DNA of 64,000 bases from NCBI GenBank assembly GCA_964035545.1, contig OZ037765.1, positions 23,311,504 to 23,375,503 of the forward strand, read 5' to 3'. The stretch is from Bugula neritina (taxonomy: Eukaryota > Animalia > Bryozoa). Every line of letters begins with the position of its first letter. Positions within the stretch are counted from its first letter, which is position 1. Positions 22,464 through 55,764 of this stretch are shown piece by piece. Under the pieces are notes generated by a model that was not told the DNA's origin, made no database searches, and was given only the letters and a program-made list of their open reading frames with translations. Both the position numbers and the translations under genes were made by a program.

Positions 22464-23799
22464 AATGGAGTGAATTTTCATAAACAAATTTCATACATAA
22501 TAAATTTTATTATTATGTTTTCTCAGCAATAAATTACATTTTGCAAAAGTTAAACACTAAAGTTTTTTGATGTTTTCTTTTTAGGTAAATTTCTATGAAA
22601 TTCAACAAGCATGCAATCTAATAGATAATCTAGCTATGATAAAAGCTGATTATATACATATGTGCATTTGCCCTTTGCATGTAAGTCCTATTTAATTAGT
22701 AAAGTCACCAGATGGCATGCAATTTTCATTAACAAAGTCACCATGCAGATTGCATGCAATATTTCAGACTGCATGTTGAAAAAACTTAATAAAACTTACT
22801 GCATAAAGATGCACTGCTTGGAATATTCAGTTAATGCTTCTGGCAAATATTGCTTTTTAGGCGATATAATTATTAACATATGAGTATGTCATATAATCGC
22901 CAAAGTCATATCTAAATAACGATGTTTACAAGGAGCTATTACTCCTTTTGAGTATTATTCTGAAATCGGCCGATCAAGTTATCATAGCACAAAAATTTTT
23001 ACTAGTGGCTTTTGCAATGCAATGCAACTCGGAGAAATTTCAACCCGGCCAAATTGAATTTCTGACTGAAAATCAAGAAGGTATAAAGGCAACTTTACTG
23101 CAAAGGCTATTGCCGACATTTTATTAGATCTTGTTTAATTCTAACTATATAATAGTAGTTTGATTAAATGTATATATATATATATATAGTCAATTTGAAG
23201 AATGATATAGTTATCTGCATCTCACAGTGTGAGAACAGAGGTATGTGTATTTTACTGCTAATGTAAATCGTATCTTTTTTATGTTATTACTGTGAAATGT
23301 TGCAATATTTAGATTTTTTATATATTTGTTAAATTTACTTTAGTGCTGGTTCTGTTGTATACATCTTATGTTTTGTTTTTACAGTTTTCACAAGTTTTCA
23401 AAGGGTAAACAAAGGATTAAGAAAGGATAAATAAATGGGTAATAAAGTTATATCAAATCAAACATATAAACCCTGTCGAGACTCGGTTTGGCTTTGAGGG
23501 GCAGATACAATATAATATTATATATGCAACGTATGCAACCTTTGGTTTTATATTTGATTTGAATATAAATTATCATGTAAATTTACAGCCATTCATTCAT
23601 ATATACCTAAATTTGTATTTAATCACTATATTTTCTAATGAAAAACTTCCTCATCAGTTATTTTACGACATTTCTGCATCAAACTGAAGTTGTTCACCCA
23701 TTTTCTAGTTCAACTATTGTATAAATTACTCTAAACTGCCAATTCTCTTTAACATAAATATTTTAACATGCAAATTAATTGTGATGTATATATAATATA

Positions 23800-26439
23800 T
23801 GTAGTGTTAACCTACCAGGCTAAGCTCCAGCTCCAGAGTGTTCCTTGTTGGCTTTCCTTCGGCTATCACTTGTCAGTAGCTTTAGTACTTGTTAGCTTGT
23901 AGCTTGTCAACATCAGATCATCTTACATGCCCCCTCCTTACAAAAGAGAAGCAGGGCACAAGAGCACATTTTCAGAATACCAGAACACATATCTATATTA
24001 TCATCATCATGATGCTAATAATTCCACATGCCCTTTTCTTTTAAAAGAGAAGTGCAATCAATTCAAACAAAACTAGCTTTCAACTAATGCCCTTGAATAC
24101 TTAAACTTATTATGAAGTGGTTCAAAGTGGCTCAGTCCTAGATGTCGAATCCCACCTCCTCTCATTGCTAGCACTGTTGGGAAGAACAACGCCAAATTTG
24201 ACATTTATCATATTATCTGAAAGTGAAGTAGCAGCAAGGGTCAAGGCTGACTTCTCTTGCTAGCTTGCAGAGTCTTCTATGAGTTAAACTAAGGAACTCA
24301 CAGGAGCAGACAACATTATTAGCAATGTTGATGATGTCATGTCAGTCCGGAGGTCAAACCTCACATTTATCATATTATCTGAAAGTGAGATGTCGAGGGT
24401 CTGCATATAGACTACACTCGGCTCACACCCCGTGAAGCAACAGCGAGGGTCACAACTGACTTCTCTCGTCGGCTTACAGAGTCTTCCATGAGTTAAACTC
24501 ACGGGAGCAGACAACATTGTTGGTAACTGCTTCTGCCTGTCATTCCATAGTATTCCACTGCAATAATATGTTTATATCATTACAGTGAACATCAATACAC
24601 TTTTCCATATCTACAACACACATGTATCATTTTATATCAACATTGCAGATCCAGCAATTTTAACCTAGTAATATCAGCTATACCAAGCAAATTTTCAGTA
24701 GAGTTTGCCAATACATAAATCTTGGTATCCACAAATCTGTTGAAGTCGCCAATGCAAACCTTAGCTCTGCCTAGCACATTCACCAAAGACTTATCAACAC
24801 CTGTAATATGCTTATCTGGTTCCTTTAATTTAATGTTCAACTTTTCTGCAGTCGCCTCAGTAAGTGTAGAAACCTCAGACCCAGTATCTAGCAAGAATTC
24901 TACACGCCTACCACTAACTAGTAAAGTCCTTGTTATTTTAGGACTGACATTGTGATTATAAGTCACATCACTCTTTTTAGAAAACTTCACTGATTTGAAG
25001 GAGTCCATAACTCCGATCCTGTTTTCTCTTTGTTCCACATATCTCTTTTTGTGATGGTATCTTTCGTTATCAGAACAATCTTGAGCAATGTGGCCGAATT
25101 CCTTGCACATGTAGCAACGGGTTTTAGGGCAGTTTCTCACATAATGTCCTGTACGGTCACATCTAAAGCATCTACCATGACTTTTGTAAGCATTTTGCGA
25201 TTTATAAATACAATGTTGATATGAATTACATGCCTCCTTTTTCTTTGAAAAAGAGTTGTCTCTATTGATAGAAGTTATCTTATCATAATTAGATCTATGT
25301 AGGACTTTATCTCTTTTCTTACAATGTTCTGAGTTACCATTAGCTTGGTAAGAATATGTGAGTCTACCAATTGACTGTTCATCTATGCATTCATTGTTTA
25401 TTGCATTTAAAGCATCCTCAGAAAGTTTACTTAAATGTGCAGCACGACTTTTTCTTTTCAGCTGTTCCCAGCTTAGGTTAGCATGCTGCAACAAATGTCT
25501 ACGTAATCCTGCATTTCTTAAACCATTAACTGCTAGTGCAACTGCAAATCCCATTCTAACATCATCATTATTGCCAAAGTTTATTGCTCTACTTAGCTTC
25601 TCAACTCTTAGCAAATAATCAATTTCGTTTTCTCCACAAGCTTGGGTCACAGTGACAAACTTCATGGTTTTCACATAAAATGTATCATCTCTATCATAGT
25701 GAGATTGCAGTAAGTCTAAGGCTAACTCATATCCATCATCAGAGTTATTATTCAAATCAAAACCTAATGACTGTAAAGTATCAAGACCTTCTGACCCTAC
25801 AGCTCCTAACAGAGCTAAAAGCTTTCTCCTACCTCTAAATCTGCTAACCTGTTCATCCCCTACTACTTCAAACCCTGCATTAAGGGAAGTAACTTCTATA
25901 CTCAATTTAAATTGAATGAGCCATGAGTTCCAAGATTTGGTTATGTTGCTTTCATCCAACTTTAATTTAGGAAAAGTATTAAGGTCTAATTTGATGTCTT
26001 CATGAGCCATACTACACTTGAGCAGTTTTAATAGAGTAAATAAAACAATTTAATTTTAAGCAGCTATCTCGTGATTATGCACTGTACTCTCAGTTCCAAT
26101 CTCTGGGCGCATCCGTGTCTCTCAAAGTTTAATTCTCAGTTCCTTTCGCAGTCACTCTTATTCTGAATCTATCAGTATTCTTTATAAATTGCTCAAAAGT
26201 CAACACTCACCACCTTTCTCAACAAGCCTCTCAACTCTTTTTTTCCAAATATAAACCTCTGAAGTCTAGTGAACTCCAAACAGCACACTTCTCTCTTTTG
26301 TAACTCTTGTCTCCTCAATACCCTGCTGACTGCGCCATGTAGTGTTAACCTACCAGGCTAAGCTCCAGCTCCAGAGTGTTCCTTGTTGGCTTTCCTTCGG
26401 CTATCACTTGTCAGTAGCTTTAGTACTTGTTAGCTTGTA
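23800..26439 (-). mobile_element. Non-autonomous Gag-protease LTR retroelement, copy 1
   Basis: 3' LTR 23800-23927 (128 bp). 5' LTR 26338-26439 (outer 26 bp lost). PBS TGGCGCAGTCAGCAGG and PPT AGGAGGGGG present. Single ORF with no RT, RH or IN. Confidence 0.92.
24637..26010 (-). CDS. Gag-aspartic protease polyprotein (457 aa) of LTR element copy 1
   Basis: Gypsy-type Gag N-terminus, two CCHC knuckles (CFRCDRTGHYVRNC, CYMCKEFGHIAQDC), retropepsin LLDTGS...NLLG, then a stop. Confidence 0.9.
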   Translation of the reverse strand: MAHEDIKLDLNTFPKLKLDESNITKSWNSWLIQFKLSIEVTSLNAGFEVVGDEQVSRFRGRRKLLALLGAVGSEGLDTLQSLGFDLNNNSDDGYELALDLLQSHYDRDDTFYVKTMKFVTVTQACGENEIDYLLRVEKLSRAINFGNNDDVRMGFAVALAVNGLRNAGLRRHLLQHANLSWEQLKRKSRAAHLSKLSEDALNAINNECIDEQSIGRLTYSYQANGNSEHCKKRDKVLHRSNYDKITSINRDNSFSKKKEACNSYQHCIYKSQNAYKSHGRCFRCDRTGHYVRNCPKTRCYMCKEFGHIAQDCSDNERYHHKKRYVEQRENRIGVMDSFKSVKFSKKSDVTYNHNVSPKITRTLLVSGRRVEFLLDTGSEVSTLTEATAEKLNIKLKEPDKHITGVDKSLVNVLGRAKVCIGDFNRFVDTKIYVLANSTENLLGIADITRLKLLDLQC

Positions 26440-28639: not shown

Positions 28640-31008
28640 TGTCAACAGAGCCACCACCCACGTGCTGGGTGAAGGCGGGGACCCCCTACTATGGCAGCCG
28701 AGGAACCACTGGCACCCTCAAGCCCTGCTCCAATTGAGACGAGCCAACGGTTCCGAAGACCCCCTAGATACCTGGCAGATTATGCTGTAGGGCATCTGGA
28801 GTTACCCCCTCATGATGATAGCCCACCCAGTACTGATGACCACCCCATCTTGGTCGGATATTCCCTCCATTTCCCCGGAGAATTCCACCAAGAAGAAAAA
28901 GTTCCGAGCCGAATTTCGGAAGACATGCGATCGCACAAGTTGTCTCTTCGAAATCCGGTGGAAATTCCCATGGGTCACGCGACTCGGGCTTTGGCAGGTA
29001 ACAATTCTGAAGCACGAGGTTTGGCCATTTCTACTTCTGACATCACTCAGTTAACACGCGATTTAAAAGTTGAACTGAATTCTAACTTTGTTACTTTAAA
29101 AGTTAATTTGAATTCTATCATTCAGACGCTATCAGCAGTTATGGGGATTACATTGCCAGATACTCAAACAGGTACTTTTTTAAGGCTAGATCCTCCAAAT
29201 ACGGAGTCTAGCCGAACTAATATAGATTGGTCAGTATTAGACTCACTGGGACCTGATTTCTTAGAACCAGAGGCCAAGATGGATTTCGGAGACGACTCTG
29301 CCCTCGATTTCTTGTTATATCAAGACGTGGGCTCGGTCACTCTCTGCGACTCTTCTCGGCCCTCAGTTTATAACTTGGCTCCATATAAACACATGCCGAA
29401 TTTCGGCGACAGTGAGAACGGCTTATTACAGTCTCTACTATCTGTTTCAGAAGAGCGTATCGATACCGAGGAGGTTAGTCGACCCGACTCCCCTTCCCCA
29501 CCGGCTCCTGTTCCGGCTTTCCACAGCCAGCAGGACGTCACTCCCTCTTCCGAAGTGTGTTCCGCCAGCGTTAGTGGCCCTGACCCCAAACCGCTTGAGC
29601 TCCAGCTCGCAGCCGGGAAGGTGCAGGGCATCCTACACGGCGACCACCCCGCAGGAGAAGAAGATTCCCCAATACTAGCCCTGCCTCGGGCCCTGGTCGC
29701 CCGCCAGTATTGGATATCTGGAGCCACCAATCTTAAGATTGGTCAAGCATGCGGTGAGCCAGGCAACCGCATCTGCCACCAGTGCCAGAGGAGATTCTCC
29801 TCTGCACGGCGTTTGCGAGTGCACACCCTTCAGCACTACATCAACGTGTTCTGCCCGTGTGGTGAGTTTTCTTACCAGCGGGACTATGTGCTAAGACACC
29901 AGCGCATATCTCGCTGTCACACGGGTTACACATTTGCTGTAGACCAGGCTACCTTTCCCGAGTTTCAGGACCTGGTGTTGCCACACGTGGCTGATCCCCG
30001 TAAACGGGCTGCTCTCGCCCTGGGATTTTCCGCGTGTCGGCCTGTGCAAGAAGAAGAGGGGGAGCCGGTCGCGACACCCCAACCGGCAGCCACCCAAACC
30101 ACTTCGGGTCGTGCTGGCACAAGTCGGATCAGGCGCCAGGGCTGATTCCTCAGACCTGGGCCCCCGACCCTCGGCGACGGGCAAGAAGCAGAGGCGACGG
30201 ACTAGCCATAGTGCCACTGACCGCCCCAGACATCAGACGTCGGCCCAGCTAGAGGAAGAGGTGCGACACCTACGCAGACGGCTACGCAGATACAAAGAAG
30301 AACTAGGGCAGCTGAGGAGGTGCGTGAGTCACCTGGAGCGGAGCCAAGCTGGTGACCGACCATGAGCGTCACAACCACCTGACAATGGGGGCGGGTGCAT
30401 GTAGTAGTGTGTATATGTATTGTTTTTGTTTTTTTATTCAGGTGTGTACCAAAGTTTTTTTTGCTTTTGTTTTCTCGCTGCATGCTACCATATATTTGTT
30501 TTTTTCTTTTTTTCTTGTCACTTGTTAAATGTGTGTCGTCGCGTCGTGTGTGTTTATATTGTGTGTGTTGTTTTTTTCTTTTTGTTATATATATTTGTGT
30601 ACGCCTCTTTATTGGAAAGCATGCTTTCCGATGGGGGGTGTGTGTGGTAGATTTATGTTGTGTGTGTGTGTGTCCTTAGTTGCCGAGATCGGCATTTCGG
30701 TACCCTGAAACACCGATATGCCGAGAATCGGCATATCGGACTACCGAAGTGCCGAGATGCCATTTCGGCATTTCGGATTCTCGAAGTGCCGATATTCGGC
30801 ATTTCGGGTCTCCGATCTTGGCAACAAAGGAATTATGTCTTTGTCCAGTGTGTATATAAAAGCCAGCGAGTTCCAGTATAGTTCAGTCTACTACTGGAGC
30901 TGGCTAGATGAAGACCTACCATACTTATCTACCTAATAAAGTTATCATCTCTTACACCTGATTTCTCGACTTATTCTGCACAACAAGTATGCAAGGCAAC
31001 TAGCTACA
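28640..31008 (+). mobile_element. 5'-truncated LTR (Gypsy-like) retrotransposon 3' portion with accessory ORF; 3' LTR 30643-31008
   Basis: GC-rich island starting with the Pol-end motif QRFRRPPRYLADY. Palindrome GGAAAGCATGCTTTCC and PPT GATGGGGGG precede TGTGGTAG...GCTACA, which contains TATATAAA and AATAAA. Confidence 0.75.
28691..30365 (+). CDS. Retroelement-borne ORF: Pol tail, zinc-finger-like region and C-terminal coiled coil (484 aa plus a frameshifted 84-aa tail)
   Basis: CHQCQRRFSSARRLRVHTLQH (C2H2-like) and CPCGEFSYQRDYVLRHQRISRCH. ORF 30111-30365 (LEEEVRHLRRRLRRYKEELGQLRRCVSHLE) continues after a frameshift near 30097. Confidence 0.6.
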
Positions 31009-31733
31009 TTCAAACCCACAGTTTTATCGCAATACACGTATATACAAGCATGATTAGTGTTATCTTTGGAAATTATTATCAGCCAGTGAGCACAGTGACT
31101 TTGAATATACACCTTTACTTTCCATTTCAGTAAATAATTTTTAACCATATGCGATTACAAGGTTGAGAGACATTATATGGCGCAAGTAAGGCCGTGGGTT
31201 TTATATTCCCACAGACTCCGTAGTAGAATCCTGTACATTAAAAGTGACATCAACTTTGCTTAAACCTAAAAAGATATCGCAAAGTTTATGATGAAACTTT
31301 AAAAGTTTAACGTTACTAGAGTAAACACTTTGCACACATATGTTTACTATATTGTACATTTCGAAACCCAGAAAAACACATGCATTATATGCTAATTTGC
31401 CCAATAAACCAACATTATACGATATTCTTATATTCTATGACGTAGTTTTTCTCAGTACTGACTTGACCACCACTGCTGAACTTTGCACTAATTATATCTG
31501 TAAATACCGGTAGTGGTGTGGCACTATAATATATTCAAAGCTTTTTCTGCAGGTTTTAGCATGTTAATTTCACTTAAAGGCTAGAAGCGTAGCCTATAAG
31601 CATTTTATATCTTACTGTAACTAATTGTGCGCTTGTTCAAATTGAGATATATAACCTATTTTGTCCATTAGTAAATGAAATGCATATGCATGCTATAAGT
31701 TTCCCATAGTGTTATGTCCTTTCAAATTTATTT

Positions 31734-45220: not shown

Positions 45221-45461
45221 ATGTGGAATTATTAGCAGCATCATGATGATGATAATATAGGTATGTGTTCTGGCATTCTGAAGTTCTGAAAACTTGCTCT
45301 TGTGCCCTGCTTCTCTTTTGTAAGGAGGGAGCATGTAAGATGATCCGATGTTGACAAGCTACAAGCTAGCAGGTACTAAAGCTACTGACCAGTGATGGCC
45401 AAAGGAAAGCCAACACAAAACACTCAGGAGCTGGAGCTTAGCCTGGTAGGTTAATATTACA
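45221..45461 (+). mobile_element. 3' fragment (UTR, PPT, LTR 45334-45461) of the Gag-protease LTR family
   Basis: Reverse-complement match to 47061-47290; absent from the paralogous site at about 61900. Confidence 0.88.
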
Positions 45462-45819: not shown

Positions 45820-47060
45820 CCTACTTTGTATATATAAATATTTTTTGCCTTAAATTCCTTAATTAATTTGTATATAGATGACATGTTAGCTGCCAAAAGG
45901 CAATTCTCACTTTCAATGTGTTGTAGGTGCGCCAAAGAAGATTGGATGGTTCAGTTGATTTCTACAGAAACTGGTACAACTACAGACTAGGCTTTGGTAA
46001 TCTGAATGGAGAGTTCTGCCTTGAAAATGACAATCTGGTGGCTGCTCTGCAAGCCAATACCAACAATGAGTTGAGGTTTGAACTTGAAAGCACTACTAAT
46101 GAACAAGCCTATGCTAAGTATAGCAGCTTCAATGTTGGTGATGAATCTACTAAATACACACTCTCAGTGTCTGGCTATGCTGGGACAGCAGTTGGACTCC
46201 ATTGGAAGTAAAATGTATCAATAATTAATAAATATCACCAAATCACCTAATGCTAATGCATGTTATGTCCAATAGTTGCTGATTATATTCAAACCACTGC
46301 AGTATATCATAATTTCTGGTAATGCTTGTATCGGGTTTGTGACAGTGTCTGGGTGACTTAGATCGTGATGCACTTTATCTATATTAACCAACTTGGCGAC
46401 AGGTTAAGTTTATTGGCTCTCAAATCGTACCAATATTGATGTACAGATAAGAATCTTTTTCATCATAATGTCAAAACCGATGGTCTATTCAGAGTGTAAA
46501 TGTTGGAGTATAAGACTGTGTGCTCATATAATGTTATAGCAAATATAGTGAGCTGTCTATTGGAAGAGGGCAGTTAATAAATGTTTCTCTGTGGCTGCTT
46601 GATTAGAGCACACTGACCTGTGCAGTGCAGTGAATTATAGCACCAGCACTGCCGGTTATGAATAGCTTTTGATGAATGTATTAAAGCAAGAAAGCTTCAA
46701 CTATTGGTGGCATACCAATACAATGCTCATTAACGATTAGAATTAATTTTGTAAATTTTTGGTTATGAATTCACAGAATTCAATTAAAATTTTGTTTTTT
46801 TCTATAGCCAATGATTTGAAAACTTTATAACAATTTGTTCGGTAACATACAATATCACAACTGGAGTACCACCAATATATCTTACTATAAATCCAGCTCT
46901 TTTACAAAATAATCTTTTAAAATTTGCCTAATATTAGTGCATATTATAGAGCAGGTTAAGTTTATTTTCAGCCTATAGTGACTAGTCTGTATTAAAAGCT
47001 TTACATAGTATGGCTAATTAAATATTTGGCCAACATTTTAGGTTTATAAACCCTCAAAAT

Positions 47061-49707
47061 TGTAGTGTTAACCTACCAGGCTAAGCTCCAGCTCCAGAGT
47101 GTTCCTTGTTGGCTTTTCTTCGGCTATCACTTGTCAGTAGCTTTAGTACTTGCTAGCTTGTAGCTTGTCAACATCGGATCATCTTACATGCTCCCTCCTT
47201 ACAAAAGAGAAGCAGGGCACAAGAGCACTTTTTCAGAATGCCAGAACACATATCTATATTATCATCATCATGATGCTAATAATTCCACATGCCCTTTTCT
47301 TTTAAAACAAAACAAAACTAGCTTTCAACTAATGCCCTTGAATACTTAAACTTATTATGAAGTGGTTCAAAGTGGCTCAGTCCTAGATGTCGAATCCCAC
47401 CTCCTCGCATTGCTAGCACTGTTGGGAAGAACAATGCCAAATTCGACATTTATCATATTATCTGCAAGTGAAGTAGCAGCAAGGGTCAAGGCTGACTTTT
47501 CTTGCTAGCTTGCAGAGTCTTCTATGAGTTAAACTAAGGAGCTCACAGGAGCAGACAACATTAGTGGCAATGTTGATGATGTCATGTCTGTACTGAGGTC
47601 AAACCTCACATTTATCATATTATCTGAAAGTGAGATGTCGAGGGTCTGCATATAGACTACACTCGGCTCACACCCCGTGAAGCAACAGCGAGGGTCACAA
47701 CTGACTTCTCTCGTCGGCTTACAGAGTCTTCCATGAGTTAAACTCACGGGAGCAGACAACATTATTGGTAACTGCTTCTGCCTGTCATTCCATAGTATTC
47801 CACTGCAATAATGTGTTTATATCATTACAGTGAACATCAACACACTTTTCCATATCTACAACACACATGTATCATTTTATATCAACATTGTAGATCCAGC
47901 AATTTTAACCTAGTAATATCAGCTATACCAAGCAAATTTTCAGTAGAGTTTGCCAATACATAAATCTTGGTATCCACAAATCTGTTGAAGTCGCCGATGC
48001 AAACCTTAGCCCTGCCTAGCACATTCACCAAAGACTTATCAACACCTGTAATATGCTTATCTGGTTCTTTTAATTTAATGTTCAACTTTTCTGCAGTAGC
48101 CTCAGTAAGTGTAGAAACTTCAGACCCAGTATCTAGCAAGAATTCTACACGTCTACCACTAACTAGTAAAGTCCTTGTTATTTTAGGACTGACATTGTGA
48201 TTATAAGTCACATCACTCTTTTTAAAAAACTTCACTGATTTTAGGGAGTCCATAACTCCAATCCTGTTTTCTCTTTGTTCCACATATCTCTTTTTGTGAT
48301 GGTATCTTTCGTTATCAGAACAATCTTGAGCAATGTGGCCGAATTCCTTGCACATGTAGCAACGGGTTTTAGGGCAGTTTCTCACATAATGTCCTGTACG
48401 GTCACATCTAAAGCATCTGCCATGACTTTTGTAAGCATTTTGCGATTTATAGCTACAATGTTGATATGAATTACATGCCTCTTTTTTCTTTGAAAAAGAG
48501 TTGTCTCTATTGATAGAAGTTATCTTATCATAATTAGATCTATGTAGGACTTTATCTCTTTTCTTACAATGTTCTGAGTTACCATTAGCTTGGTAAGAAT
48601 ATGTGAGTCTACCAATTGACTGTTCATCTATGCATTCATTGTTTATTGCATTTAAAGCATCCTCAGAAAGTTTACTTAAATGTGCAGCACGACTTTTTCT
48701 TTTCAGCTGTTCCCAGCTGAGGTTAGCATGCTGCAACAAATGTCTACGTAATCCTGTATTTCTTAGACCATTAACTGCTAGTGCAACTGCAAATCCCATT
48801 CTAACATCATCATTATTGCCAAAGTGTATTGCTCTACTTAGCTTCTCAACTCTTAGCAAATAATCAATTTCGTTTTCTCCACAAGCTTGGGTCACAGTGA
48901 CAAATCTCATGGTTTTCACATAAAATGTATCATCTCTATCATAGTGAGATTGCAGTAAGTCTAAGGCTAACTCATATCCATCATCAGAGTTATTATTTAA
49001 ATCAAAACCTAATGACTGTAAAGTATCAAGACCTTCTGGCCCTACAGCTCCTAACAGAGCTAAAAGCTTTCTCCTACCTCTAAATCTGCTAACCTGTTCA
49101 TCCCCTACTACTTCAAACCCTGCATTAAGGGAAGTAACTTCTATACTCAATTTAAATTGAATGAGCCATGAGTTCCAAGATTTGGTTATGTTGCTTTCAT
49201 CCAACTTTAATTTAGGAAAAGCATTAAGGTCTAATTTGATGTCTTCATGAGCCATACTACACTTAAGCAGGTTTAATAGAGTAAATAAAACAATTTAATT
49301 TTAAGCAGCTATCTTGTGATTATGCACTGTACTCTCAGTTTCAACCCCTGGGCATCCGTGTCTCTTTAAATTTAATTCTCAGTTCCTTTCGCCGGCACTC
49401 TTATTCTGAATCTATTAGTATTATTTATAAATTGCTCAAAAGTCAACACTCACCACCTTTCTCAACAAGCCTCTCAACTCTTTTTCCCAAATATAAACCT
49501 CTGAAGTCTAGTGAACTCTACACAACACACTTCTCTTTTTTGTAACTCTTGTCTCCTCAATATCCTGCCGACTGCGCCATGTAGTGTTAACCTACCAGGC
49601 TAAGCTCCAGCTCCAGAGTGTTCCTTGTTGGCTTTTCTTCGGCTATCACTTGTCAGTAGCTTTAGTACTTGCTAGCTTGTAGCTTGTCAACATCAGATCA
49701 TCTTACA
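47061..49707 (-). mobile_element. Non-autonomous Gag-protease LTR retroelement, copy 2 (complete, 2647 bp)
   Basis: 128-bp LTRs at 47061-47188 and 49580-49707 (one mismatch seen), TG...CA ends, 5-bp TSD AAAAT. 18-nt PBS TGGCGCAGTCGGCAGGAT (tRNA-Ser-like) and PPT AAGGAGGGAG. Confidence 0.95.
47882..49255 (-). CDS. Gag-aspartic protease polyprotein (457 aa) of LTR element copy 2
   Basis: Same domains as 24637-26010; 8 amino-acid differences and no indels. Confidence 0.9.
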   Translation of the reverse strand: MAHEDIKLDLNAFPKLKLDESNITKSWNSWLIQFKLSIEVTSLNAGFEVVGDEQVSRFRGRRKLLALLGAVGPEGLDTLQSLGFDLNNNSDDGYELALDLLQSHYDRDDTFYVKTMRFVTVTQACGENEIDYLLRVEKLSRAIHFGNNDDVRMGFAVALAVNGLRNTGLRRHLLQHANLSWEQLKRKSRAAHLSKLSEDALNAINNECIDEQSIGRLTYSYQANGNSEHCKKRDKVLHRSNYDKITSINRDNSFSKKKEACNSYQHCSYKSQNAYKSHGRCFRCDRTGHYVRNCPKTRCYMCKEFGHIAQDCSDNERYHHKKRYVEQRENRIGVMDSLKSVKFFKKSDVTYNHNVSPKITRTLLVSGRRVEFLLDTGSEVSTLTEATAEKLNIKLKEPDKHITGVDKSLVNVLGRAKVCIGDFNRFVDTKIYVLANSTENLLGIADITRLKLLDLQC

Positions 49708-49881
49708 AAAATAACTTTTGTGGCTCGAGTTGATATAAATACAAAATATTGATTTTTTCCGGAGACATCCTACTATATCACAATGAATATAAATTTTCAA
49801 CAAATGATTGTGACAACGTAAATAAATTTTCTTGGCTAATTATTGTTTTTTTCACACAACTATGAGAAACCCATTTAGGAT

Positions 49882-51034: not shown

Positions 51035-54000
51035 TGCTATGTATTGAACTAGCCTTGTCAATACACCACATAGATGCATATTATGACATACCACATTTTA
51101 TGTGCTGGGTTACTTTTTATTCTAATGTCTATTTGTTTAAACTCATTATATACAGTTTTTGCCATATCAATATACAAGCCAGTTGTTATTCTGTCACTGT
51201 TTATCTACATGTATTTTTATGTCAGTTACTTGTTAGCTTCAATACAATACAGTCATACATTCTACTCTACAGCCAATCTTACTTATACGTGCTTAATCTT
51301 ACTGTTTACTCTTGTTTAACATAAATAACAAGAACACAACAACTGGTGTCAGAACTGGGATAAATACAACCATATCATTTTGAAATGGAGGAAGTTATAA
51401 AACAACTTGTAACAACAATGCAGCAACAACAGCAGCAGCAGATGGAGCAATTCGCTCAAATACTGGGACAGTTTACTACAGCTGTAAAGCCTGGTGAACC
51501 TGCACAAAATAAATCTGTAACTGTGCCTAGATTCGACTCTTATGACAGAGACAAGGAATCATGGACTCAGTATTTACAGCGGCTCAATCAACACTTTACC
51601 GTTTACAACGTAAGTGACAGTGAACAAAAACGAGCTTGCTTACTTTCATGGATTGGCTCAGAATGTTATGAATTGCTAACAAAACTGTATGGCTCGGAGG
51701 ACATAACTACCATGTCGTTCGATAATCTAGCAGGTAAGCTTAGCACACATTTTATTGAAACAAAACATGTGCAAGCAGCTAGATATCAGTTTTATAACTG
51801 TAAAATGAAACCTAACCAGTCATACTCAGATTGGGCAGCTGATTTACGGGGTTTAGCTCGTAACTGCAATTTTACCTGTAAAAAGGAAGACTGTGGTGAA
51901 AGTTATGTTGATGATCAAATTCGTGACATAATTATTAAAGAAACTCCACATGCTGATGTACGTAGACAATGCTTATTGGATCCAGATCCTACACTGGAAA
52001 ATGTGTTAAAGAAGGCAGCTACATACATTCAAACAGCAGAAACTGATAAAGTTTTGAAGGGTGAGACCTCTACACCTGTTACCACAAATCAAATGTCCTC
52101 AACATACAAACGTCAAAACAAAGGTAGTCAGGGCAAGAGACCACAATTTCACAAGTCTGAAAACCAGACTGCTATGCCAACACAGCCTTCCAAGTTGAAA
52201 TCGTGTCCACAATGCTACATTAGCCACGATCGTAAACAATGTCCTCACCGTAACAAACAATGTAAGCTGTGCAACAAAACAGGACATATTTCTAGCGTCT
52301 GCAAAACTTCATCAAAATCAAGTGGGAACAACTCTCACTTCGTAGAAGAATCTTCAAGTAGTGTTTACAATATATATGAACGCAAGGGGAAACAAATATG
52401 GATTAACACTACTGTGAACAACAAACAAACACAATTTCAGTGGGACACAGGCGCTACTTGCTCTATGGTAGGGAACAAAGGCTACGAAGCCCTAGGCTCT
52501 CCACCATATCAACAGACAGACACGACCCTTCATTCATATGGAAATACCGCTATGCAGGTACGTGGTGAATGCTATGTAACAGTAACCATTGGTCAGACTA
52601 CAAAAAACAATCTTCGATTATTAATAGTAGACTCAGATGAAGGTGTCAACTTACTAGGTGTAGACTGGAGTGACAGTTTTGGACTATCACAACAGGGTCT
52701 ATCTGCTGTAGACAGTGACACCGAGGTTACTAACGCAGTACACAATGTTGATACCAAAGTCAAAGTTCTCACAACAAAATATCCCGATGTTTTCAAACCT
52801 GGAATAGGACATTGTAAAACATTCAAAGTACCAATTTACCTCAAATCAGAACAGAAACCTTGTTTTTCTAAACCTAGAGAAATCCCCTATTCTCAACATG
52901 AGGCCACTAGGGCTGAATTAAACAGGCTTGAAGCTGAAGGGGTCATACAACGTATTAACTTCAGTAACTGGGCCGCTCCTATAGTAGTGGTTACCAAACC
53001 GTCTGGCAAAGTTCGCATCTGTGGAGATTTCAAGCGACTCAATCAGTGCATCTCCATAGATCAGCATCCACTACCAAAACTGGATGATTTAATGAACAGG
53101 CTTAGAGGAGGTCAATTTTTCACCAAACTTGACTTGGCTGATGCTTACCTACAACTTGAGCTAGAAGATGATGCCAAACAGCTGTGTGTGATAAACACTC
53201 CATTCGGATTATACCAATATAATAGAATGTGCTTTGGAATTGCCCCTGGTCCAGCTCAGTTTCAACGGTGTATGGATACCTTGACTCAAAAATTACCAGG
53301 AGTTGCTGCATACCTTGATGATTTAATCATTACTGGTAAAACGGAGGAAGAACACTGGACTAATCTGACAAACCTGCTTTCAACACTTCAAGAGCATGGT
53401 TTTCGAATACGATTAGACAAGTGTGAATTCTTCAAGCACTCTGTTGAGTATCTGGGTCACACCATCGACAAGGATGGCAAACGACCAACAGCTGCTTCCA
53501 TGGCAGCTCTCTCTCAATTACCTCGACCACAGGACTTGCACCAACTGCAAGCATTTCTAGGAAAGGTTAACTACTATGGGCGCTTCATCTCTAATCTTGC
53601 GGATAAAGCAGCTCCACTGTACAAGCTCCTCAAGAATGATACCACATTCACATGGTCAAATGAATGTGAACAAGCCTTTACCCAGCTGAAGAATAGCATT
53701 ATCAATGCTACTAGCCTGACACACTATGATGAGACAAAACCCCTAATTCTTGCAGCCGATGCGTCATCCTATGGATTAGGAGTTGTTCTCTCTCAGGATA
53801 CTGATCAGGGAGAAGTTCCAGTGGCTTACGCTTCAAAAACATTGACTGACACTCAAAAGAACTACTCTCAGATTGAACGTGAAGCTCTCTCTATTATATA
53901 TGGTGTGACCAAGTTCAGACAATTCCTATATGGACGACATTTTACGCTAGTCACAGACCATGAGCCTCTCACTACTATTTTTGCACCAGGCAAAAATATT

Positions 54001-55764
54001 CCAACTTTAACAGCACAGCGTTTACAACGCTGGGCTCTCACTCTGATGGGTTTCCAGTTTACTATCAGGTACAGGAAAACCTCCCAACATGGGAATGCTG
54101 ATTGTCTTTCGAGGTTACCATTTGGTCCTGATAGCAATTTTGACCGAATCGAGCAGCAGGACAACAAGGAGATATCCCATGCAATACAAGAGCAAATATT
54201 TACATCACCTGTTGCTGGATACAATGAGGTCAGACAGGAAACTGTCAAAGATCAACACCTTCAACGTGTCATATCATGGATTCAGCAAGGTTGGCCAGTC
54301 ACAAAACCAGATGACAAAGAACTGGGCACTTTCTGGATTCACCGTGACTCCCTGCAACTTGAACAAGGTGTCTTGTTGTTGATACGCGAACAAACAAGTC
54401 GTGTAGTTATACCTCGTTCACTTCAATGCAGGATACTAGACACACTTCATTCTTCACACTGGGGTGTAGTCAAGGTAAAGCAACTAGCTCGCCGCTATGT
54501 GTGGTGGAGCACCATCAACACGGATATTGAGCTAGCCATAAAATCTTGCGAAGTATGCCAGGAGTCAGCAGCTGCTCCAGACCAGAAGTTTCAAAGCTGG
54601 CCCAAGACAGACAAGCCATGGGAACGCATACATCTAGATTTTGCTGGACCTTTTAGAGGAAAAATGTGGCTTATCTGCATTGATGCTTGTTCAAAATTTC
54701 CATATATTGGACGCATGGAAATAGGGCAGACAACTTCTCGCCAAACGGTACAAGTATTAAAGGATATTTTTGCTATAGAAGGTGTACCTGCTACTATAGT
54801 TACAGATAATGGCCCACAGTTTTCCAGTCAAGAATTTACTAATTTCTGCAACAGTTTCCACATCAACCATGTCTTGTCACCTCCATACCATCCACCTTCA
54901 AATGGTGAAGCTGAACGATTTGTCAGAACGTTTAAAAGCTCTGTGGACAAGAATTGTGAGGGAGGAGCATCTCTAGACGAGAGTATCAGACTTACATTAG
55001 CATCATATAGAACCATTCCACATCCTGCTTTGGAATGGAAAACACCTGCAGAAGTCCTGCATGGCCGCCAGCCCAGGGGCTTACTATCTCTTCTCCAACC
55101 TACTAATCACAAATACCCTAAACATGACAAGCCACAGACAACACAGTTCACTATTGACTCATTAGTGTACGCTCGTAACTACAGTACTGGTCCAAAGTGG
55201 ATCCCAGGAACTATTATCTCAAAACAAGGAAATGCTATCTACATAGTACAAACAGACAGTGGCAACTGGAAGAGGCATGCTAATCAGCTTCAAATTCGCC
55301 TTCCATCTACAAATATGAACAAATCAGTGGTACCCAACACACCACAAGCTGATAATAATATTGTCCATCCTCATGAGAGGCGCTATCCAACCAGAGAGCG
55401 CAGACAGCCAGATTGGTACAAGCCATAACTCTTAAGTCTAAATTTGTGAGGGAGGAGTGCTATGTATTGAACTAGCCTTGTCAATACACCACATAGATGC
55501 ATATTATGACATACCACATTTTATGTGCTGGGTTACTTTTTATTCTAATGTCTATTTGTTTAAACTCATTATATACAGTTTTTGCCATATCAATATACAA
55601 GCCAGTTGTTATTCTGTCACTGTTTATCTACATGTATTTTTATGTCAGTTACTTGTTAGCTTCAATACAATACAGTCATACATTCTACTCTACAGCCAAT
55701 CTTACTTATACGTGCTTAATCTTACTGTTTACTCTTGTTTAACATAAATAACAAGAACACAACA
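51035..55764 (+). mobile_element. Full-length intact Ty3/Gypsy (Mag-like) LTR retrotransposon
   Basis: 307-bp LTRs at 51035-51341 and 55458-55764 with no differences seen. TSD TTAAT, PBS TGGTGTCAGAACTGGGAT (tRNA-Leu-like), PPT GAGGGAGGAG. The paralogous site at 38517-38521 is empty. Confidence 0.97.
51385..55428 (+). CDS. Gag-Pol polyprotein, 1347 aa (Gag-PR-RT-RH-IN)
   Basis: Two Zn knuckles, DTGA protease, YLDD RT, ADAS/TDH RNase H, HHCC plus D,D(35)E integrase, in Gypsy order. Confidence 0.97.
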   Translation: MEEVIKQLVTTMQQQQQQQMEQFAQILGQFTTAVKPGEPAQNKSVTVPRFDSYDRDKESWTQYLQRLNQHFTVYNVSDSEQKRACLLSWIGSECYELLTKLYGSEDITTMSFDNLAGKLSTHFIETKHVQAARYQFYNCKMKPNQSYSDWAADLRGLARNCNFTCKKEDCGESYVDDQIRDIIIKETPHADVRRQCLLDPDPTLENVLKKAATYIQTAETDKVLKGETSTPVTTNQMSSTYKRQNKGSQGKRPQFHKSENQTAMPTQPSKLKSCPQCYISHDRKQCPHRNKQCKLCNKTGHISSVCKTSSKSSGNNSHFVEESSSSVYNIYERKGKQIWINTTVNNKQTQFQWDTGATCSMVGNKGYEALGSPPYQQTDTTLHSYGNTAMQVRGECYVTVTIGQTTKNNLRLLIVDSDEGVNLLGVDWSDSFGLSQQGLSAVDSDTEVTNAVHNVDTKVKVLTTKYPDVFKPGIGHCKTFKVPIYLKSEQKPCFSKPREIPYSQHEATRAELNRLEAEGVIQRINFSNWAAPIVVVTKPSGKVRICGDFKRLNQCISIDQHPLPKLDDLMNRLRGGQFFTKLDLADAYLQLELEDDAKQLCVINTPFGLYQYNRMCFGIAPGPAQFQRCMDTLTQKLPGVAAYLDDLIITGKTEEEHWTNLTNLLSTLQEHGFRIRLDKCEFFKHSVEYLGHTIDKDGKRPTAASMAALSQLPRPQDLHQLQAFLGKVNYYGRFISNLADKAAPLYKLLKNDTTFTWSNECEQAFTQLKNSIINATSLTHYDETKPLILAADASSYGLGVVLSQDTDQGEVPVAYASKTLTDTQKNYSQIEREALSIIYGVTKFRQFLYGRHFTLVTDHEPLTTIFAPGKNIPTLTAQRLQRWALTLMGFQFTIRYRKTSQHGNADCLSRLPFGPDSNFDRIEQQDNKEISHAIQEQIFTSPVAGYNEVRQETVKDQHLQRVISWIQQGWPVTKPDDKELGTFWIHRDSLQLEQGVLLLIREQTSRVVIPRSLQCRILDTLHSSHWGVVKVKQLARRYVWWSTINTDIELAIKSCEVCQESAAAPDQKFQSWPKTDKPWERIHLDFAGPFRGKMWLICIDACSKFPYIGRMEIGQTTSRQTVQVLKDIFAIEGVPATIVTDNGPQFSSQEFTNFCNSFHINHVLSPPYHPPSNGEAERFVRTFKSSVDKNCEGGASLDESIRLTLASYRTIPHPALEWKTPAEVLHGRQPRGLLSLLQPTNHKYPKHDKPQTTQFTIDSLVYARNYSTGPKWIPGTIISKQGNAIYIVQTDSGNWKRHANQLQIRLPSTNMNKSVVPNTPQADNNIVHPHERRYPTRERRQPDWYKP

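What the first reader, a model, noticed from the sequence alone, without database searches (positions are those of the whole stretch)
47061..49707. RT-less Gag+protease LTR element with 128-bp LTRs that is mobile and appears to be under purifying selection
Seen: a complete 2.65-kb element with TSD, near-identical tiny LTRs, tRNA-Ser-type PBS, PPT and one 457-aa ORF (Gag, 2 CCHC, retropepsin) that stops cleanly, with no RT/RH/IN remnant. An independent insertion at 23800-26439 has the same structure and an intact ORF, and a third fragment lies at 45221. By-eye comparison of the two ORFs gave about 12 synonymous-only and 8 amino-acid-changing codons, with no indels or stops. Neutral decay would give roughly 3 nonsynonymous per synonymous change. 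Known: Gag/protease-only non-autonomous elements (TR-GAG) are described in plants. Inference: this is an animal family that builds and matures its own capsid while borrowing RT and integrase in trans, like a satellite retroelement.
Basis: partly seen in the sequence, partly recalled or inferred. Interest (0 to 1): 0.85.

Follow-up and report, generated by a model that had tools for sequence, protein, structure and literature searches.

The report
Gag-protease-only LTR retrotransposon in a bryozoan
This is a real, recently mobile 2.65-kb LTR retrotransposon that keeps only a capsid-plus-protease gene under purifying selection. It carries the same priming and end signals as a complete Ty3/gypsy element of the same bryozoan host, so it is an animal example of the "semi-autonomous" parasite-of-a-parasite already described in wheat.

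Summary
The element at 47061-49707 has 128-nt LTRs (1 mismatch), TG..CA ends, a 5-bp TSD (AAAAT), an 18-nt PBS, a polypurine tract, and one 457-aa ORF on the minus strand. The ORF encodes a CA-like Gag, two CCHC knuckles and a complete DTG retropepsin, and it stops 5 codons after protease homology ends. No RT, RNase H or integrase remnant is present.

A second insertion (23800-26439) has the same layout and an intact ORF. An LTR-plus-113-nt fragment (45221-45461) is absent from a paralogous duplicated segment.

dN/dS between the two ORFs is 0.13-0.18 (16 synonymous and 8 nonsynonymous changes, p about 1e-6). All indels are non-coding.

New findings:
- Bugula neritina-labelled metagenome contigs hold a decayed 90% copy with the same ORF-to-3'UTR junction.
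- The same samples hold an intact autonomous Ty3/gypsy element (gag-stop-pol-ORF3). It has the identical PBS, a 93% identical PPT block, a homologous 159-nt LTR and the sister Gag (about 70% identical in the capsid domain).
- Two other Gag-PR-only families exist elsewhere. They do not group with this one (AU p 4e-5), which suggests recurrent origin.

The kind is known (wheat Sabrina_SA/WHAM; zebrafish Gag-only BHIKHARI), so this is a new member in a new phylum. Capsid formation and use of RT/IN in trans remain inferred.

The parts
47056..47060 (.). Target-site duplication AAAAT, left copy (copy 1)
   Evidence: Same 5 nt at 49708-49712, directly outside the LTR ends
47061..47188 (-). 3' LTR of copy 1 (128 nt, TG..CA)
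   Evidence: 127/128 identical to 49580-49707. Alignable over its full length with the 159-nt LTR of autonomous element L002; the first 29 nt are 26/29 identical
47189..47200 (-). Polypurine tract AAGGAGGGAGCA abutting the 3' LTR. It lies within a 43-nt block that is 40/43 identical to the same position in L002
47189..47881 (-). 693-nt non-coding 3' region between the ORF stop and the 3' LTR. It holds two ~100-nt direct repeats (47468-47570 and 47677-47771), and one stretch is 74% identical to the 3' part of ORF3 of L002
   Evidence: No ORF of 80 aa or more, no RT/RH/IN similarity, no Rfam match
47882..49255 (-). 457-aa Gag-NC-protease ORF (52 kDa), intact
   Evidence: dN/dS against copy 2 is 0.13-0.18
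48632..49228 (-). Capsid (CA)-like two-lobed helical domain, residues ~10-208
   Evidence: AF2 model has pLDDT 91. The best Foldseek hits are all retroelement capsids: PNMA2 capsid (TM 0.50/0.56), MOAP1 and Arc C-lobes (TMt 0.74-0.75), dArc1 and HIV CA. About 70% identical to L002 Gag over residues 8-200
48320..48415 (-). Two CCHC zinc knuckles (residues 281-294 and 299-312), the nucleocapsid part
   Evidence: Pfam zf-CCHC, 2 stretches; motif positions; PDB profile hits to retroviral NC
47897..48190 (-). Retropepsin domain, residues 356-453, with catalytic DTG at 375-377 (48125-48133). The ORF stops 5 codons after the domain
   Evidence: Pfam. AF2 pLDDT above 90; Foldseek to EIAV protease has TMt 0.79 over 100 of 104 residues. 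47% identical to L002 pol residues 2-94, and homology ends there. omega is 0.06 in this part
49256..49561 (-). 5' leader between PBS and ATG (presumed packaging region), the most diverged segment between copies (6.2%)
   Evidence: in-frame stops lie upstream of the ATG
49562..49579 (-). Primer-binding site TGGCGCAGTCGGCAGGAT
   Evidence: Abuts the 5' LTR; 0 expected by chance. Identical 18 nt at the same position in L002. Related PBS in L011 (16/18) and L010 (first 12 nt)
49580..49707 (-). 5' LTR of copy 1
49708..49712 (.). Target-site duplication AAAAT, right copy
23800..26439 (-). Copy 2, an independent insertion: 3' LTR 23800-23927, ORF 24637-26010 (intact, 457 aa), PBS 26320-26337 (2 mismatches), 5' LTR 26338-26439 cut to 102 nt
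   Evidence: Its two LTRs are 102/102 identical over the shared part
45221..45461 (+). Older fragment: 113 nt of the 3' internal region (with PPT) plus a full 128-nt LTR (45334-45461), ~90% identical. It is absent from the paralogous segment near 61.9 kb

Best explanation
This is a non-autonomous ('semi-autonomous') Ty3/gypsy-type LTR retrotransposon family of a bugulid bryozoan, Bugula neritina or a very close relative.

Origin. It derives from an ancestor with gag, an in-frame stop, pol (PR-RT-RH-IN) and a third ORF. A deletion running from just after the protease into the 3' part of ORF3 removed RT, RNase H and integrase. The stop between gag and protease is not present, so every translation product is a Gag-NC-PR fusion.

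Proposed cycle.
1. The 5' LTR drives a ~2.5-kb RNA.
2. The RNA is translated into the 52-kDa Gag-NC-PR protein.
3. That protein assembles around, and preferentially packages, the RNA that encoded it, and its protease matures the particle.
4. RT/RNase H and integrase come from co-expressed Gag-Pol of the related autonomous family (L002/L012). That Gag-Pol can join the particle because the capsid domains are still ~70% identical.
5. The borrowed enzymes can act on the RNA because the tRNA primer site, polypurine tract and LTR termini are the same.

Shown: the anatomy, the lack of RT/IN, independent recent insertions, purifying selection on the ORF (protease included), the fold assignments, and the existence and co-occurrence of a matching autonomous element.

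Inferred: particle assembly, self-cleavage, cis-preference, and which element supplies RT/IN.
For: Anatomy:
- LTRs, TSD, PBS, PPT and the ORF are all in place.
- Pol homology stops at pol residue 94, 5 codons before the stop, and the 693-nt 3' region has no RT/RH/IN similarity.
- Part of that 3' region matches the 3' end of ORF3 of L002.

Mobility and youth:
- LTR pairs differ at 1/128 and 0/102 positions, while the two copies differ by ~3%.
- Flanks differ between copies.
- The fragment is missing from the paralogous segment.

Selection:
- Sd 16 and Nd 8; omega 0.126 (NG86), 0.155 (YN00), 0.177 (ML); Fisher p 1e-6.
- With the observed substitution spectrum placed at random, 17.1 +/- 2.1 changes are nonsynonymous against 7 observed. 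0 of 20,000 trials were as low, and 57% of trials created a stop.
- All 4 indels between the copies lie outside the ORF.
- omega is 0.06 in the protease part.

A lineage, not one-off deletions:
- The decayed copy L001/L014 is 90% identical in one alignment that runs across the ORF end and 216 nt into the 3' region. It also has the same 3' repeats and LTR.
- omega to it is 0.36-0.50 although it is itself decaying.
- A further 89% fragment is P0205.

Partner:
- L002 and L012 are 99.1% identical to each other. They carry intact gag 424 aa, pol 1031 aa and ORF3 401 aa.
- Shared signals: PBS 18/18, PPT block 40/43, first 29 nt of the LTR 26/29, and an LTR alignable end to end. Gag DNA, by contrast, is only 69% identical.
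- In the Gag tree the window copies are sister to L002/L012, with support 100/98.

Host link:
- L001, L012 and L014 come from JGI samples whose contigs are prefixed AY690838, the B. neritina mitogenome accession.
- The Gypsy element next to copy 1 is 98.1% identical to a contig from run SRR4020082. L002 comes from SRR4020086, an adjacent accession number.

Folds: protease and capsid assignments.
Against: - Only two intact copies, one decayed copy and two fragments were available. No genome-wide census was possible: both metagenome scans returned nothing, and the host's proteins are not in the protein collection.
- The partner's Gag is only 49% identical overall and its protease 47%. A closer autonomous relative, or a pol-bearing form with the very same LTR, could exist unseen.
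- No expression data were examined.
- No TATA box or AATAAA signal is visible by eye in the 128-nt LTR.
- The PBS was not compared with a host tRNA gene, because none is in the window or the loci. The tRNA-Ser assignment therefore rests on general knowledge of eukaryotic tRNA-Ser 3' ends.
- That the window is from the same species as the AY690838 samples is circumstantial.
Confidence: 0.72

Rival explanations
1. The copies are dead-on-arrival deletion products, thrown off repeatedly by a pol-carrying master element with the same LTRs. There is then no self-propagating RT-less lineage, and the synonymous excess is inherited from the autonomous parents.
For: Internal deletions are common among LTR element copies. 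Only a 64-kb window and a few short contigs were seen, so a pol-bearing form with these LTRs cannot be excluded.
Against: - All copies share one junction and the same 3' region with its internal duplication, including a copy 10% diverged.
- The closest pol-bearing relative found is only 69% identical in gag DNA.
- No pol-bearing copy with these LTRs is in the window.
- The stop between gag and PR, present in the autonomous relatives, is absent from every copy in which that site is readable.
Confidence: 0.08
2. The element moves purely as a passenger, and its ORF is kept for another reason. Either the host benefits from it or has become dependent on it, as proposed for zebrafish BHIKHARI Gag. 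Or it acts as a dominant-negative Gag-PR that interferes with the autonomous element.
For: - Purifying selection alone does not say who benefits.
- Gag-only active ERVs with host roles exist (PMC12067270).
- The constitutive Gag-PR fusion, without the stop that normally keeps PR scarce, is an unusual stoichiometry.
Against: - Selection is visible between young, differently located, non-orthologous copies. That fits selection among replicating lineages better than selection on a host locus.
- Cis signals are conserved with a partner.
- Three separate families kept exactly Gag+PR.
Confidence: 0.12
3. The low dN/dS is a small-sample or gene-conversion artefact, and the ORFs are simply too young to have decayed.
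For: - There are only 24 substitutions between two copies.
- The two copies lie 23 kb apart in a region full of segmental duplications.
Against: - The p value is ~1e-6 and the randomisation gave 0/20,000.
- Divergence in the non-coding leader (6.2%) is close to dS (4.4-5.9%), so the copies are diverged enough to show decay.
- Flanks and TSDs differ, so the copies are insertions and not a segmental duplicate.
- The third, decayed copy still gives omega 0.36-0.50.
Confidence: 0.06
4. It is a domesticated Gag-protease host gene family of the PEG10/RTL/PNMA type, not a transposon.
For: There is a weak Pfam PNMA hit, and the best capsid fold match is PNMA2. PEG10 also encodes Gag plus protease (general knowledge).
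Against: Intact LTRs, TSD, PBS and PPT are present. There are several non-syntenic copies, and the fragment is present at one paralogous segment but absent from the other.
Confidence: 0.02

Closest known systems
Wheat/barley RLG_Sabrina_SA and RLG_WHAM, 'semi-autonomous' Gypsy elements (PMC9744471)
   Same: Both are LTR-bounded Gypsy-type elements whose only gene encodes GAG with a protease domain directly downstream. RT and integrase are absent, and they are thought to replicate with an autonomous relative (RLG_Wilma).
   Different: The wheat elements are plant elements of 6.6-8.3 kb with long LTRs and thousands of copies. This one is an animal (bryozoan) element of 2.65 kb with 128-nt LTRs. 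Here the partner was identified by an identical PBS and a matching PPT and LTR end, and selection on the ORF was measured. There is no sequence relationship beyond the superfamily.
TR-GAG elements of plants
   Same: Short LTR elements that keep a gag ORF and lack pol.
   Different: As I recall the definition, TR-GAG keep GAG only. This element also keeps a complete, selected protease.
Zebrafish BHIKHARI-1/2 (PMC12067270)
   Same: An animal LTR element family whose consensus carries a single Gag ORF and no pol, yet shows recent insertions.
   Different: BHIKHARI is a vertebrate endogenous retrovirus of the lokiretrovirus group. Its Gag has a foamy-like coiled coil, no CCHC knuckles and no protease. 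It has a demonstrated developmental role. No such role is known or tested here.
Autonomous element L002/L012 from the B. neritina-labelled samples
   Same: Identical PBS, near-identical PPT block, homologous short LTR, and sister Gag (49% overall, ~70% in the capsid domain), with protease 47% identical.
   Different: L002/L012 has an in-frame stop between gag and pol, a full PR-RT-RH-IN pol, a third ORF with a CCHC knuckle, a ~130-aa longer disordered Gag linker, and a 159-nt LTR.
Classic autonomous/non-autonomous LTR pairs: BARE1/BARE2 (PMC9744471, PMC3735527) and, from general knowledge, MusD/ETn
   Same: A defective family is propagated by the proteins of a related complete family, with which it shares cis signals.
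   Different: BARE2 lacks functional Gag but keeps pol, and ETn encodes nothing. Here the structural protein and its protease are kept and the enzymes for DNA synthesis and integration are lost.

Membership tests
LTR retrotransposon, Ty3/gypsy (Metaviridae) lineage | Direct long terminal repeats with TG..CA ends, flanked by a short target-site duplication | tested here: met
   128-nt LTRs, 127/128 identical, TG..CA, 5-bp TSD AAAAT
LTR retrotransposon, Ty3/gypsy (Metaviridae) lineage | tRNA primer-binding site next to the 5' LTR and polypurine tract next to the 3' LTR | tested here: met
   The PBS starts with TGG directly after the LTR, and 0 are expected by chance. The PPT AAGGAGGGAGCA lies directly before the 3' LTR. 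Which tRNA primes was not tested, because no host tRNA gene was at hand
LTR retrotransposon, Ty3/gypsy (Metaviridae) lineage | Gag with retroelement capsid fold and CCHC nucleocapsid | tested here: met
   AF2 pLDDT 91. All top Foldseek hits are retroelement capsids, though E-values are modest (best 3.5e-3). Two CCHC knuckles
LTR retrotransposon, Ty3/gypsy (Metaviridae) lineage | Pol with RT, RNase H and integrase in the order PR-RT-RH-IN | tested here: not met
   Only PR is present. The sister element L002/L012 has PR-RT-RH-IN, so the lineage assignment is by descent and the element itself is not autonomous
Semi-autonomous Gag-protease-only LTR elements (as RLG_Sabrina_SA / RLG_WHAM) | The only ORF encodes GAG plus protease; RT and IN are absent in the whole family | tested here: met
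   Met for all copies available: two intact, one decayed, two fragments. A genome-wide census was not possible
Semi-autonomous Gag-protease-only LTR elements (as RLG_Sabrina_SA / RLG_WHAM) | Multiple copies at different sites with signs of recent transposition | tested here: met
   Different flanks, near-identical LTR pairs, and an empty paralogous site
Semi-autonomous Gag-protease-only LTR elements (as RLG_Sabrina_SA / RLG_WHAM) | A co-resident autonomous family that shares cis signals and could supply RT/IN | tested here: met
   L002/L012 shares the PBS 18/18, the PPT block 40/43 and the LTR start 26/29. L012 and the RT-less copy L014 come from the same JGI sample. Actual mobilisation in trans is not testable with these tools
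TRIM / LARD (non-coding non-autonomous LTR elements) | No protein-coding capacity between the LTRs | tested here: not met
   An intact 457-aa ORF under purifying selection is present
Domesticated Gag(-PR) host genes (PEG10/RTL/PNMA/Arc type) | Single orthologous host locus without LTRs, TSD, PBS or PPT | tested here: not met
   All four transposon hallmarks are present, and several non-syntenic copies exist
Functional retropepsin | Complete retropepsin monomer fold with the catalytic D-T/S-G triad | tested here: met
   DTG at residues 375-377. The model aligns to 100 of 104 residues of EIAV protease, TMt 0.79. Catalysis itself is not testable here

The most novel reading that the evidence does not exclude
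Keeping exactly Gag+protease while discarding RT, RNase H and integrase may be a recurrent, selected strategy in this Ser-PBS clade of marine-invertebrate Ty3/gypsy elements.

At least three families have lost everything between the end of the protease and the 3' part of the element: the window family, L010/L013 and L011. Their breakpoints differ, and their Gags do not form a clade.

Under this reading they are true 'satellite' retroelements. They build and mature their own particles, capture Gag-Pol from a helper, and persist long enough to diverge to about half amino-acid identity from that helper while conserving the shared cis signals.
Probability: 0.4. Interest if true: 0.65.

Novelty: new member of a known kind. 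Interest (0 to 1): 0.5.

Why it matters
Non-autonomous LTR elements are usually treated as passive passengers. A family that loses the DNA-synthesis and integration enzymes, yet keeps its capsid and protease under purifying selection, implies that making its own particle pays off. That points to cis-preferential packaging and competition with the helper.

This has been argued for very large plant genomes. Here is a compact animal case of 2.65 kb, with a candidate helper identified by shared PBS, PPT and LTR ends. Two further families appear to have reached the same layout independently.

That makes the hypothesis directly testable. It also gives bryozoan genome annotators a defined family that a pol-based search would miss.

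Tried and rejected
- The intact Gypsy element next to copy 1 (51035-55764) as the partner: rejected. It is only 19% identical in the NC-PR stretch and has a different PBS, LTR and TSD type.
Even L001's own sample was not hit, so that collection evidently does not hold those samples.
- Protein word search with the full ORF: no relative above 49% identity in the 251-800 aa range. The window's proteins are not in the collection.
- tRNA scans of the window and of 14 loci, to test the PBS against a host tRNA-Ser: no tRNA genes found.
- Rfam scan of the element region: no match.
- Sequence-profile search of the PDB: only nucleocapsid-type hits, and the capsid was not detectable by sequence. A separate fold search was needed.
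- Search for the SRA run numbers in papers: nothing, so the organism of SRR402008x is inferred from its 99.1% match to the AY690838-labelled contig.
- A single origin of all RT-less Gag-PR families: rejected by the AU test, p 3.8e-5. The caveat is that I had already seen a quick tree when I named the group.
Full report
OBSERVATION

The element is real and lies where stated. Two 128-nt direct repeats, 47061-47188 and 49580-49707, differ at one position and have TG...CA ends. They are flanked by the 5-bp duplication AAAAT.

The only long ORF, 47882-49255, is on the minus strand, so the element reads right to left in the window. It encodes 457 aa (52 kDa) with these features:
- a helical N-terminal domain;
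- two CCHC knuckles, at residues 281-294 and 299-312;
- a C-terminal aspartic protease with DTG at residues 375-377.

On the element strand the 5' LTR is followed at once by TGGCGCAGTCGGCAGGAT. That sequence occurs only in the two copies, and none is expected by chance. The 3' LTR is preceded by AAGGAGGGAGCA.

Between the stop codon and the 3' LTR lie 693 nt with no ORF of 80 aa or more. This stretch holds a pair of ~100-nt direct repeats.

OTHER COPIES IN THE WINDOW

Copy 2 (23800-26439) is 96.7% identical, has different flanks, and carries an intact 457-aa ORF. Its right-hand LTR ends after 102 nt. Its TSD (possibly ATATA) is therefore ambiguous.

The third piece (45221-45461) is a full LTR plus 113 nt of the adjoining internal region, about 90% identical and in the opposite orientation. 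It sits inside a segmental duplication (about 38.6-45.8 kb against 55.9-62.2 kb), and the other duplicate lacks it. It therefore arrived after the duplication.

The LTR pairs within copies differ at 1/128 and 0/102 positions, whereas the two copies differ by about 3%. Both insertions are thus young, and most of the difference between them arose while their lineages were replicating.

NO RT, RNASE H OR INTEGRASE

tblastn with the pol proteins of two related autonomous elements matches the element only over the protease. The match ends at pol residue 94 of L002, which is 5 codons before the stop.

The AlphaFold model of the whole ORF is confident for three parts: residues ~10-208, the knuckles, and residues 356-453.
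- The C-terminal domain superposes on 100 of the 104 residues of EIAV protease (TMt 0.79) and on many other retropepsins and DDI1. The protease monomer is therefore complete rather than clipped.
- A separate model of residues 1-209 (pLDDT 91) finds only retroelement capsids as its best matches: PNMA2 capsid, the MOAP1 and Arc C-lobes, dArc1 and HIV CA. Their E-values are modest.

SELECTION

The two ORFs differ at 24 nucleotides in 21 codons: 13 synonymous-only and 8 amino-acid-changing, with no indel or stop.

| Measure | Result |
|---|---|
| omega, Nei-Gojobori | 0.126 (Sd 16, Nd 8; Fisher p 1e-6) |
| omega, LWL85 | 0.170 |
| omega, YN00 | 0.155 |
| omega, ML | 0.177 |
| Same substitution spectrum placed at random on the ORF | 17.1 +/- 2.1 nonsynonymous against 7 observed; never as few in 20,000 trials; 57% of trials made a stop |
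| omega, protease part alone | 0.06 (Sd 9, Nd 2) |

All four indels between the copies are non-coding. The leader is 6.2% diverged, which is close to dS.

RELATED SEQUENCES AND THE HOST

The exhaustive HMMER search found three protein fragments at 81-96% identity. All three come from one 4.3-kb JGI contig, L001. The same locus is present in a second sample as L014.

The contig names carry the prefix AY690838, which is the GenBank accession of the Bugula neritina mitochondrial genome (PMC2678162). I take these to be B. neritina holobiont metagenomes.

L001 is a 5'-truncated, decayed copy with frameshifting indels and in-frame stops. It is 90% identical to the window copies in a single alignment that runs across the ORF end and 216 nt into the 3' region. 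The 3' repeats and the LTR follow. The RT-less layout therefore predates at least 10% of divergence. omega to this copy is still 0.36-0.50.

A further 149-aa fragment at 89% identity (P0205) lies on another JGI contig that I could not fetch.

The intact Gypsy element beside copy 1 is 98.1% identical to a Logan contig from SRR4020082. That ties the window's species to that set of runs.

THE AUTONOMOUS RELATIVE

The closest Gag outside the family is P0001 (49% identity). It lies on L002 (Logan SRR4020086, 6.2 kb) and is followed by pol and a third ORF:

| ORF | Length | Content |
|---|---|---|
| gag | 424 aa | ends at an in-frame stop before pol |
| pol | 1031 aa | protease, RT, RNase H, integrase |
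| ORF3 | 401 aa | one CCHC knuckle |

L012, from the same AY690838-labelled JGI sample as L014, is 99.1% identical to L002.

In L002, gag and pol are in the same frame, separated by one stop codon. The window ORF reads through that region without a stop.

L002 shares these cis signals with the RT-less element:
- the 18-nt PBS, exactly;
- 40 of 43 nt upstream of the 3' LTR, including the PPT;
- 26 of the first 29 nt of the LTR;
- an LTR (159 nt) that is alignable end to end.

By contrast, gag DNA is only 69% identical. The capsid domain remains about 70% identical in protein, while the disordered linker has diverged and shortened. A stretch of the RT-less 3' region matches the 3' part of L002 ORF3. 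This places the deletion between the end of the protease and ORF3.

In a careful ML tree the window copies are sister to L002/L012, with support 100/98.

OTHER RT-LESS FAMILIES

L011 (JGI BBAY70, 2.7 kb) runs in this order:
1. an LTR end;
2. a related PBS;
3. a 528-aa Gag-PR ORF;
4. about 590 non-coding nt;
5. a purine tract and the start of an LTR.

It has no RT.

L010 and L013 are 93% identical to each other. In them the protease is followed within ~130 nt by sequence related to the C-terminal part of ORF3, again with no room for RT or IN.

The breakpoints of these families differ from the window family's. Their Gags sit elsewhere in the tree, and forcing all RT-less Gags into one clade is rejected (AU p 3.8e-5; I had seen a quick tree first). 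This points to a recurrent origin of the same layout.

INTERPRETATION

The best reading is a semi-autonomous Ty3/gypsy derivative. It makes its own Gag-NC-PR and relies on the L002/L012 family, or a closer unseen relative, for RT, RNase H and integrase. Purifying selection on an ORF carried by non-orthologous young insertions is most simply explained if the protein favours the RNA that encodes it. Particle formation, self-cleavage, cis-preference and trans-complementation are all inferred.

Rivals are given lower weight, for the reasons listed in the Rival explanations section:
- sporadic deletion products of a master element;
- a host-beneficial or interfering Gag;
- a small-sample artefact;
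- a domesticated host gene.

COMPARISON WITH WHAT IS KNOWN

In the paper library, Gag-plus-protease-only Gypsy families are described in wheat. These are RLG_Sabrina_SA and RLG_WHAM, called 'semi-autonomous' and said to co-evolve with RLG_Wilma (PMC9744471). A Gag-only, recently active ERV family is described in zebrafish (PMC12067270).

My searches found no invertebrate case. The library is not exhaustive, however, and repeat databases could not be searched.

I therefore rate this a new member of a known kind. It offers a compact animal example with a concrete candidate helper.

HOUSEKEEPING

- No protein read through a stop was sent to a search; the gag and protease pieces of L002, L006 and L013 were used separately.
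- Broken copies are described only as broken.

Noticed in passing
window 51035-55764 (+): An intact autonomous Ty3/gypsy element lies 1.3 kb from copy 1. It has 307-nt LTRs that are 100% identical (51035-51341 and 55458-55764), TSD TTAAT, and a single 1347-aa Gag-PR-RT-RH-IN ORF (51385-55428). A 98.1% identical copy is in Logan run SRR4020082 (L015). It belongs to a different clade from the RT-less element and is not its partner.
   Followed up: yes
window 28691-30145 (+): A 484-aa ORF, Pro/Ser-rich with one C2H2-like motif near the C-terminus. It has no Pfam family and no meaningful PDB sequence match. It is unusually long for this AT-rich sequence and may be a TE or single-exon host gene.
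   Followed up: partly
window 16.7 kb, 21.0 kb, 45.9 kb, 62.3 kb; segments 38.6-45.8 kb and 55.9-62.2 kb: Fibrinogen C-terminal-domain exons lie in tandem and segmental duplicates. One large duplication has copies 94-99% identical. RT-less copy 1 and the young Gypsy element lie between its two copies.
   Followed up: partly
L002:378-6005, L006:278-5956, L004:1018-6694: The autonomous relatives have gag and pol in the same frame, separated by a single stop codon (readthrough-type expression). They also have a third ORF of 400-420 aa with a CCHC knuckle and a coiled-coil-like part, of unknown function. Remnants of this ORF3 form part of the 3' regions of the RT-less families.
   Followed up: partly
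L010:423-1988 versus L013:44-2332: These two copies of one RT-less family are 93% identical. In L010, Gag and protease are one continuous 521-aa ORF with a stop after the protease. L013 keeps the in-frame stop between gag and protease and reads on from the protease into the ORF3-like tail.
   Followed up: no
window 47468-47570 and 47677-47771; L001:2531-2616 and 2678-2771: The ~100-nt direct repeat pair in the 3' non-coding region is kept in all copies, including the 10%-diverged one. The 3' region and LTRs are less diverged between copies (2.0-2.6%) than synonymous sites and the leader (4.4-6.2%). This hints at cis constraint. There is no Rfam match.
   Followed up: partly
window 26320-26337 and 26338-26439: Copy 2 has two mismatches in its PBS relative to copy 1 and L002. 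It also lacks the outer 26 nt of its 5' LTR, although its two LTRs are otherwise identical.
   Followed up: no
L001:228-461 and window 22858-23101; L003:3528-3768 and window 30793-31034: Other repeats are shared at 78-83% identity between the Bugula-labelled contigs and the window, outside the element studied.
   Followed up: no
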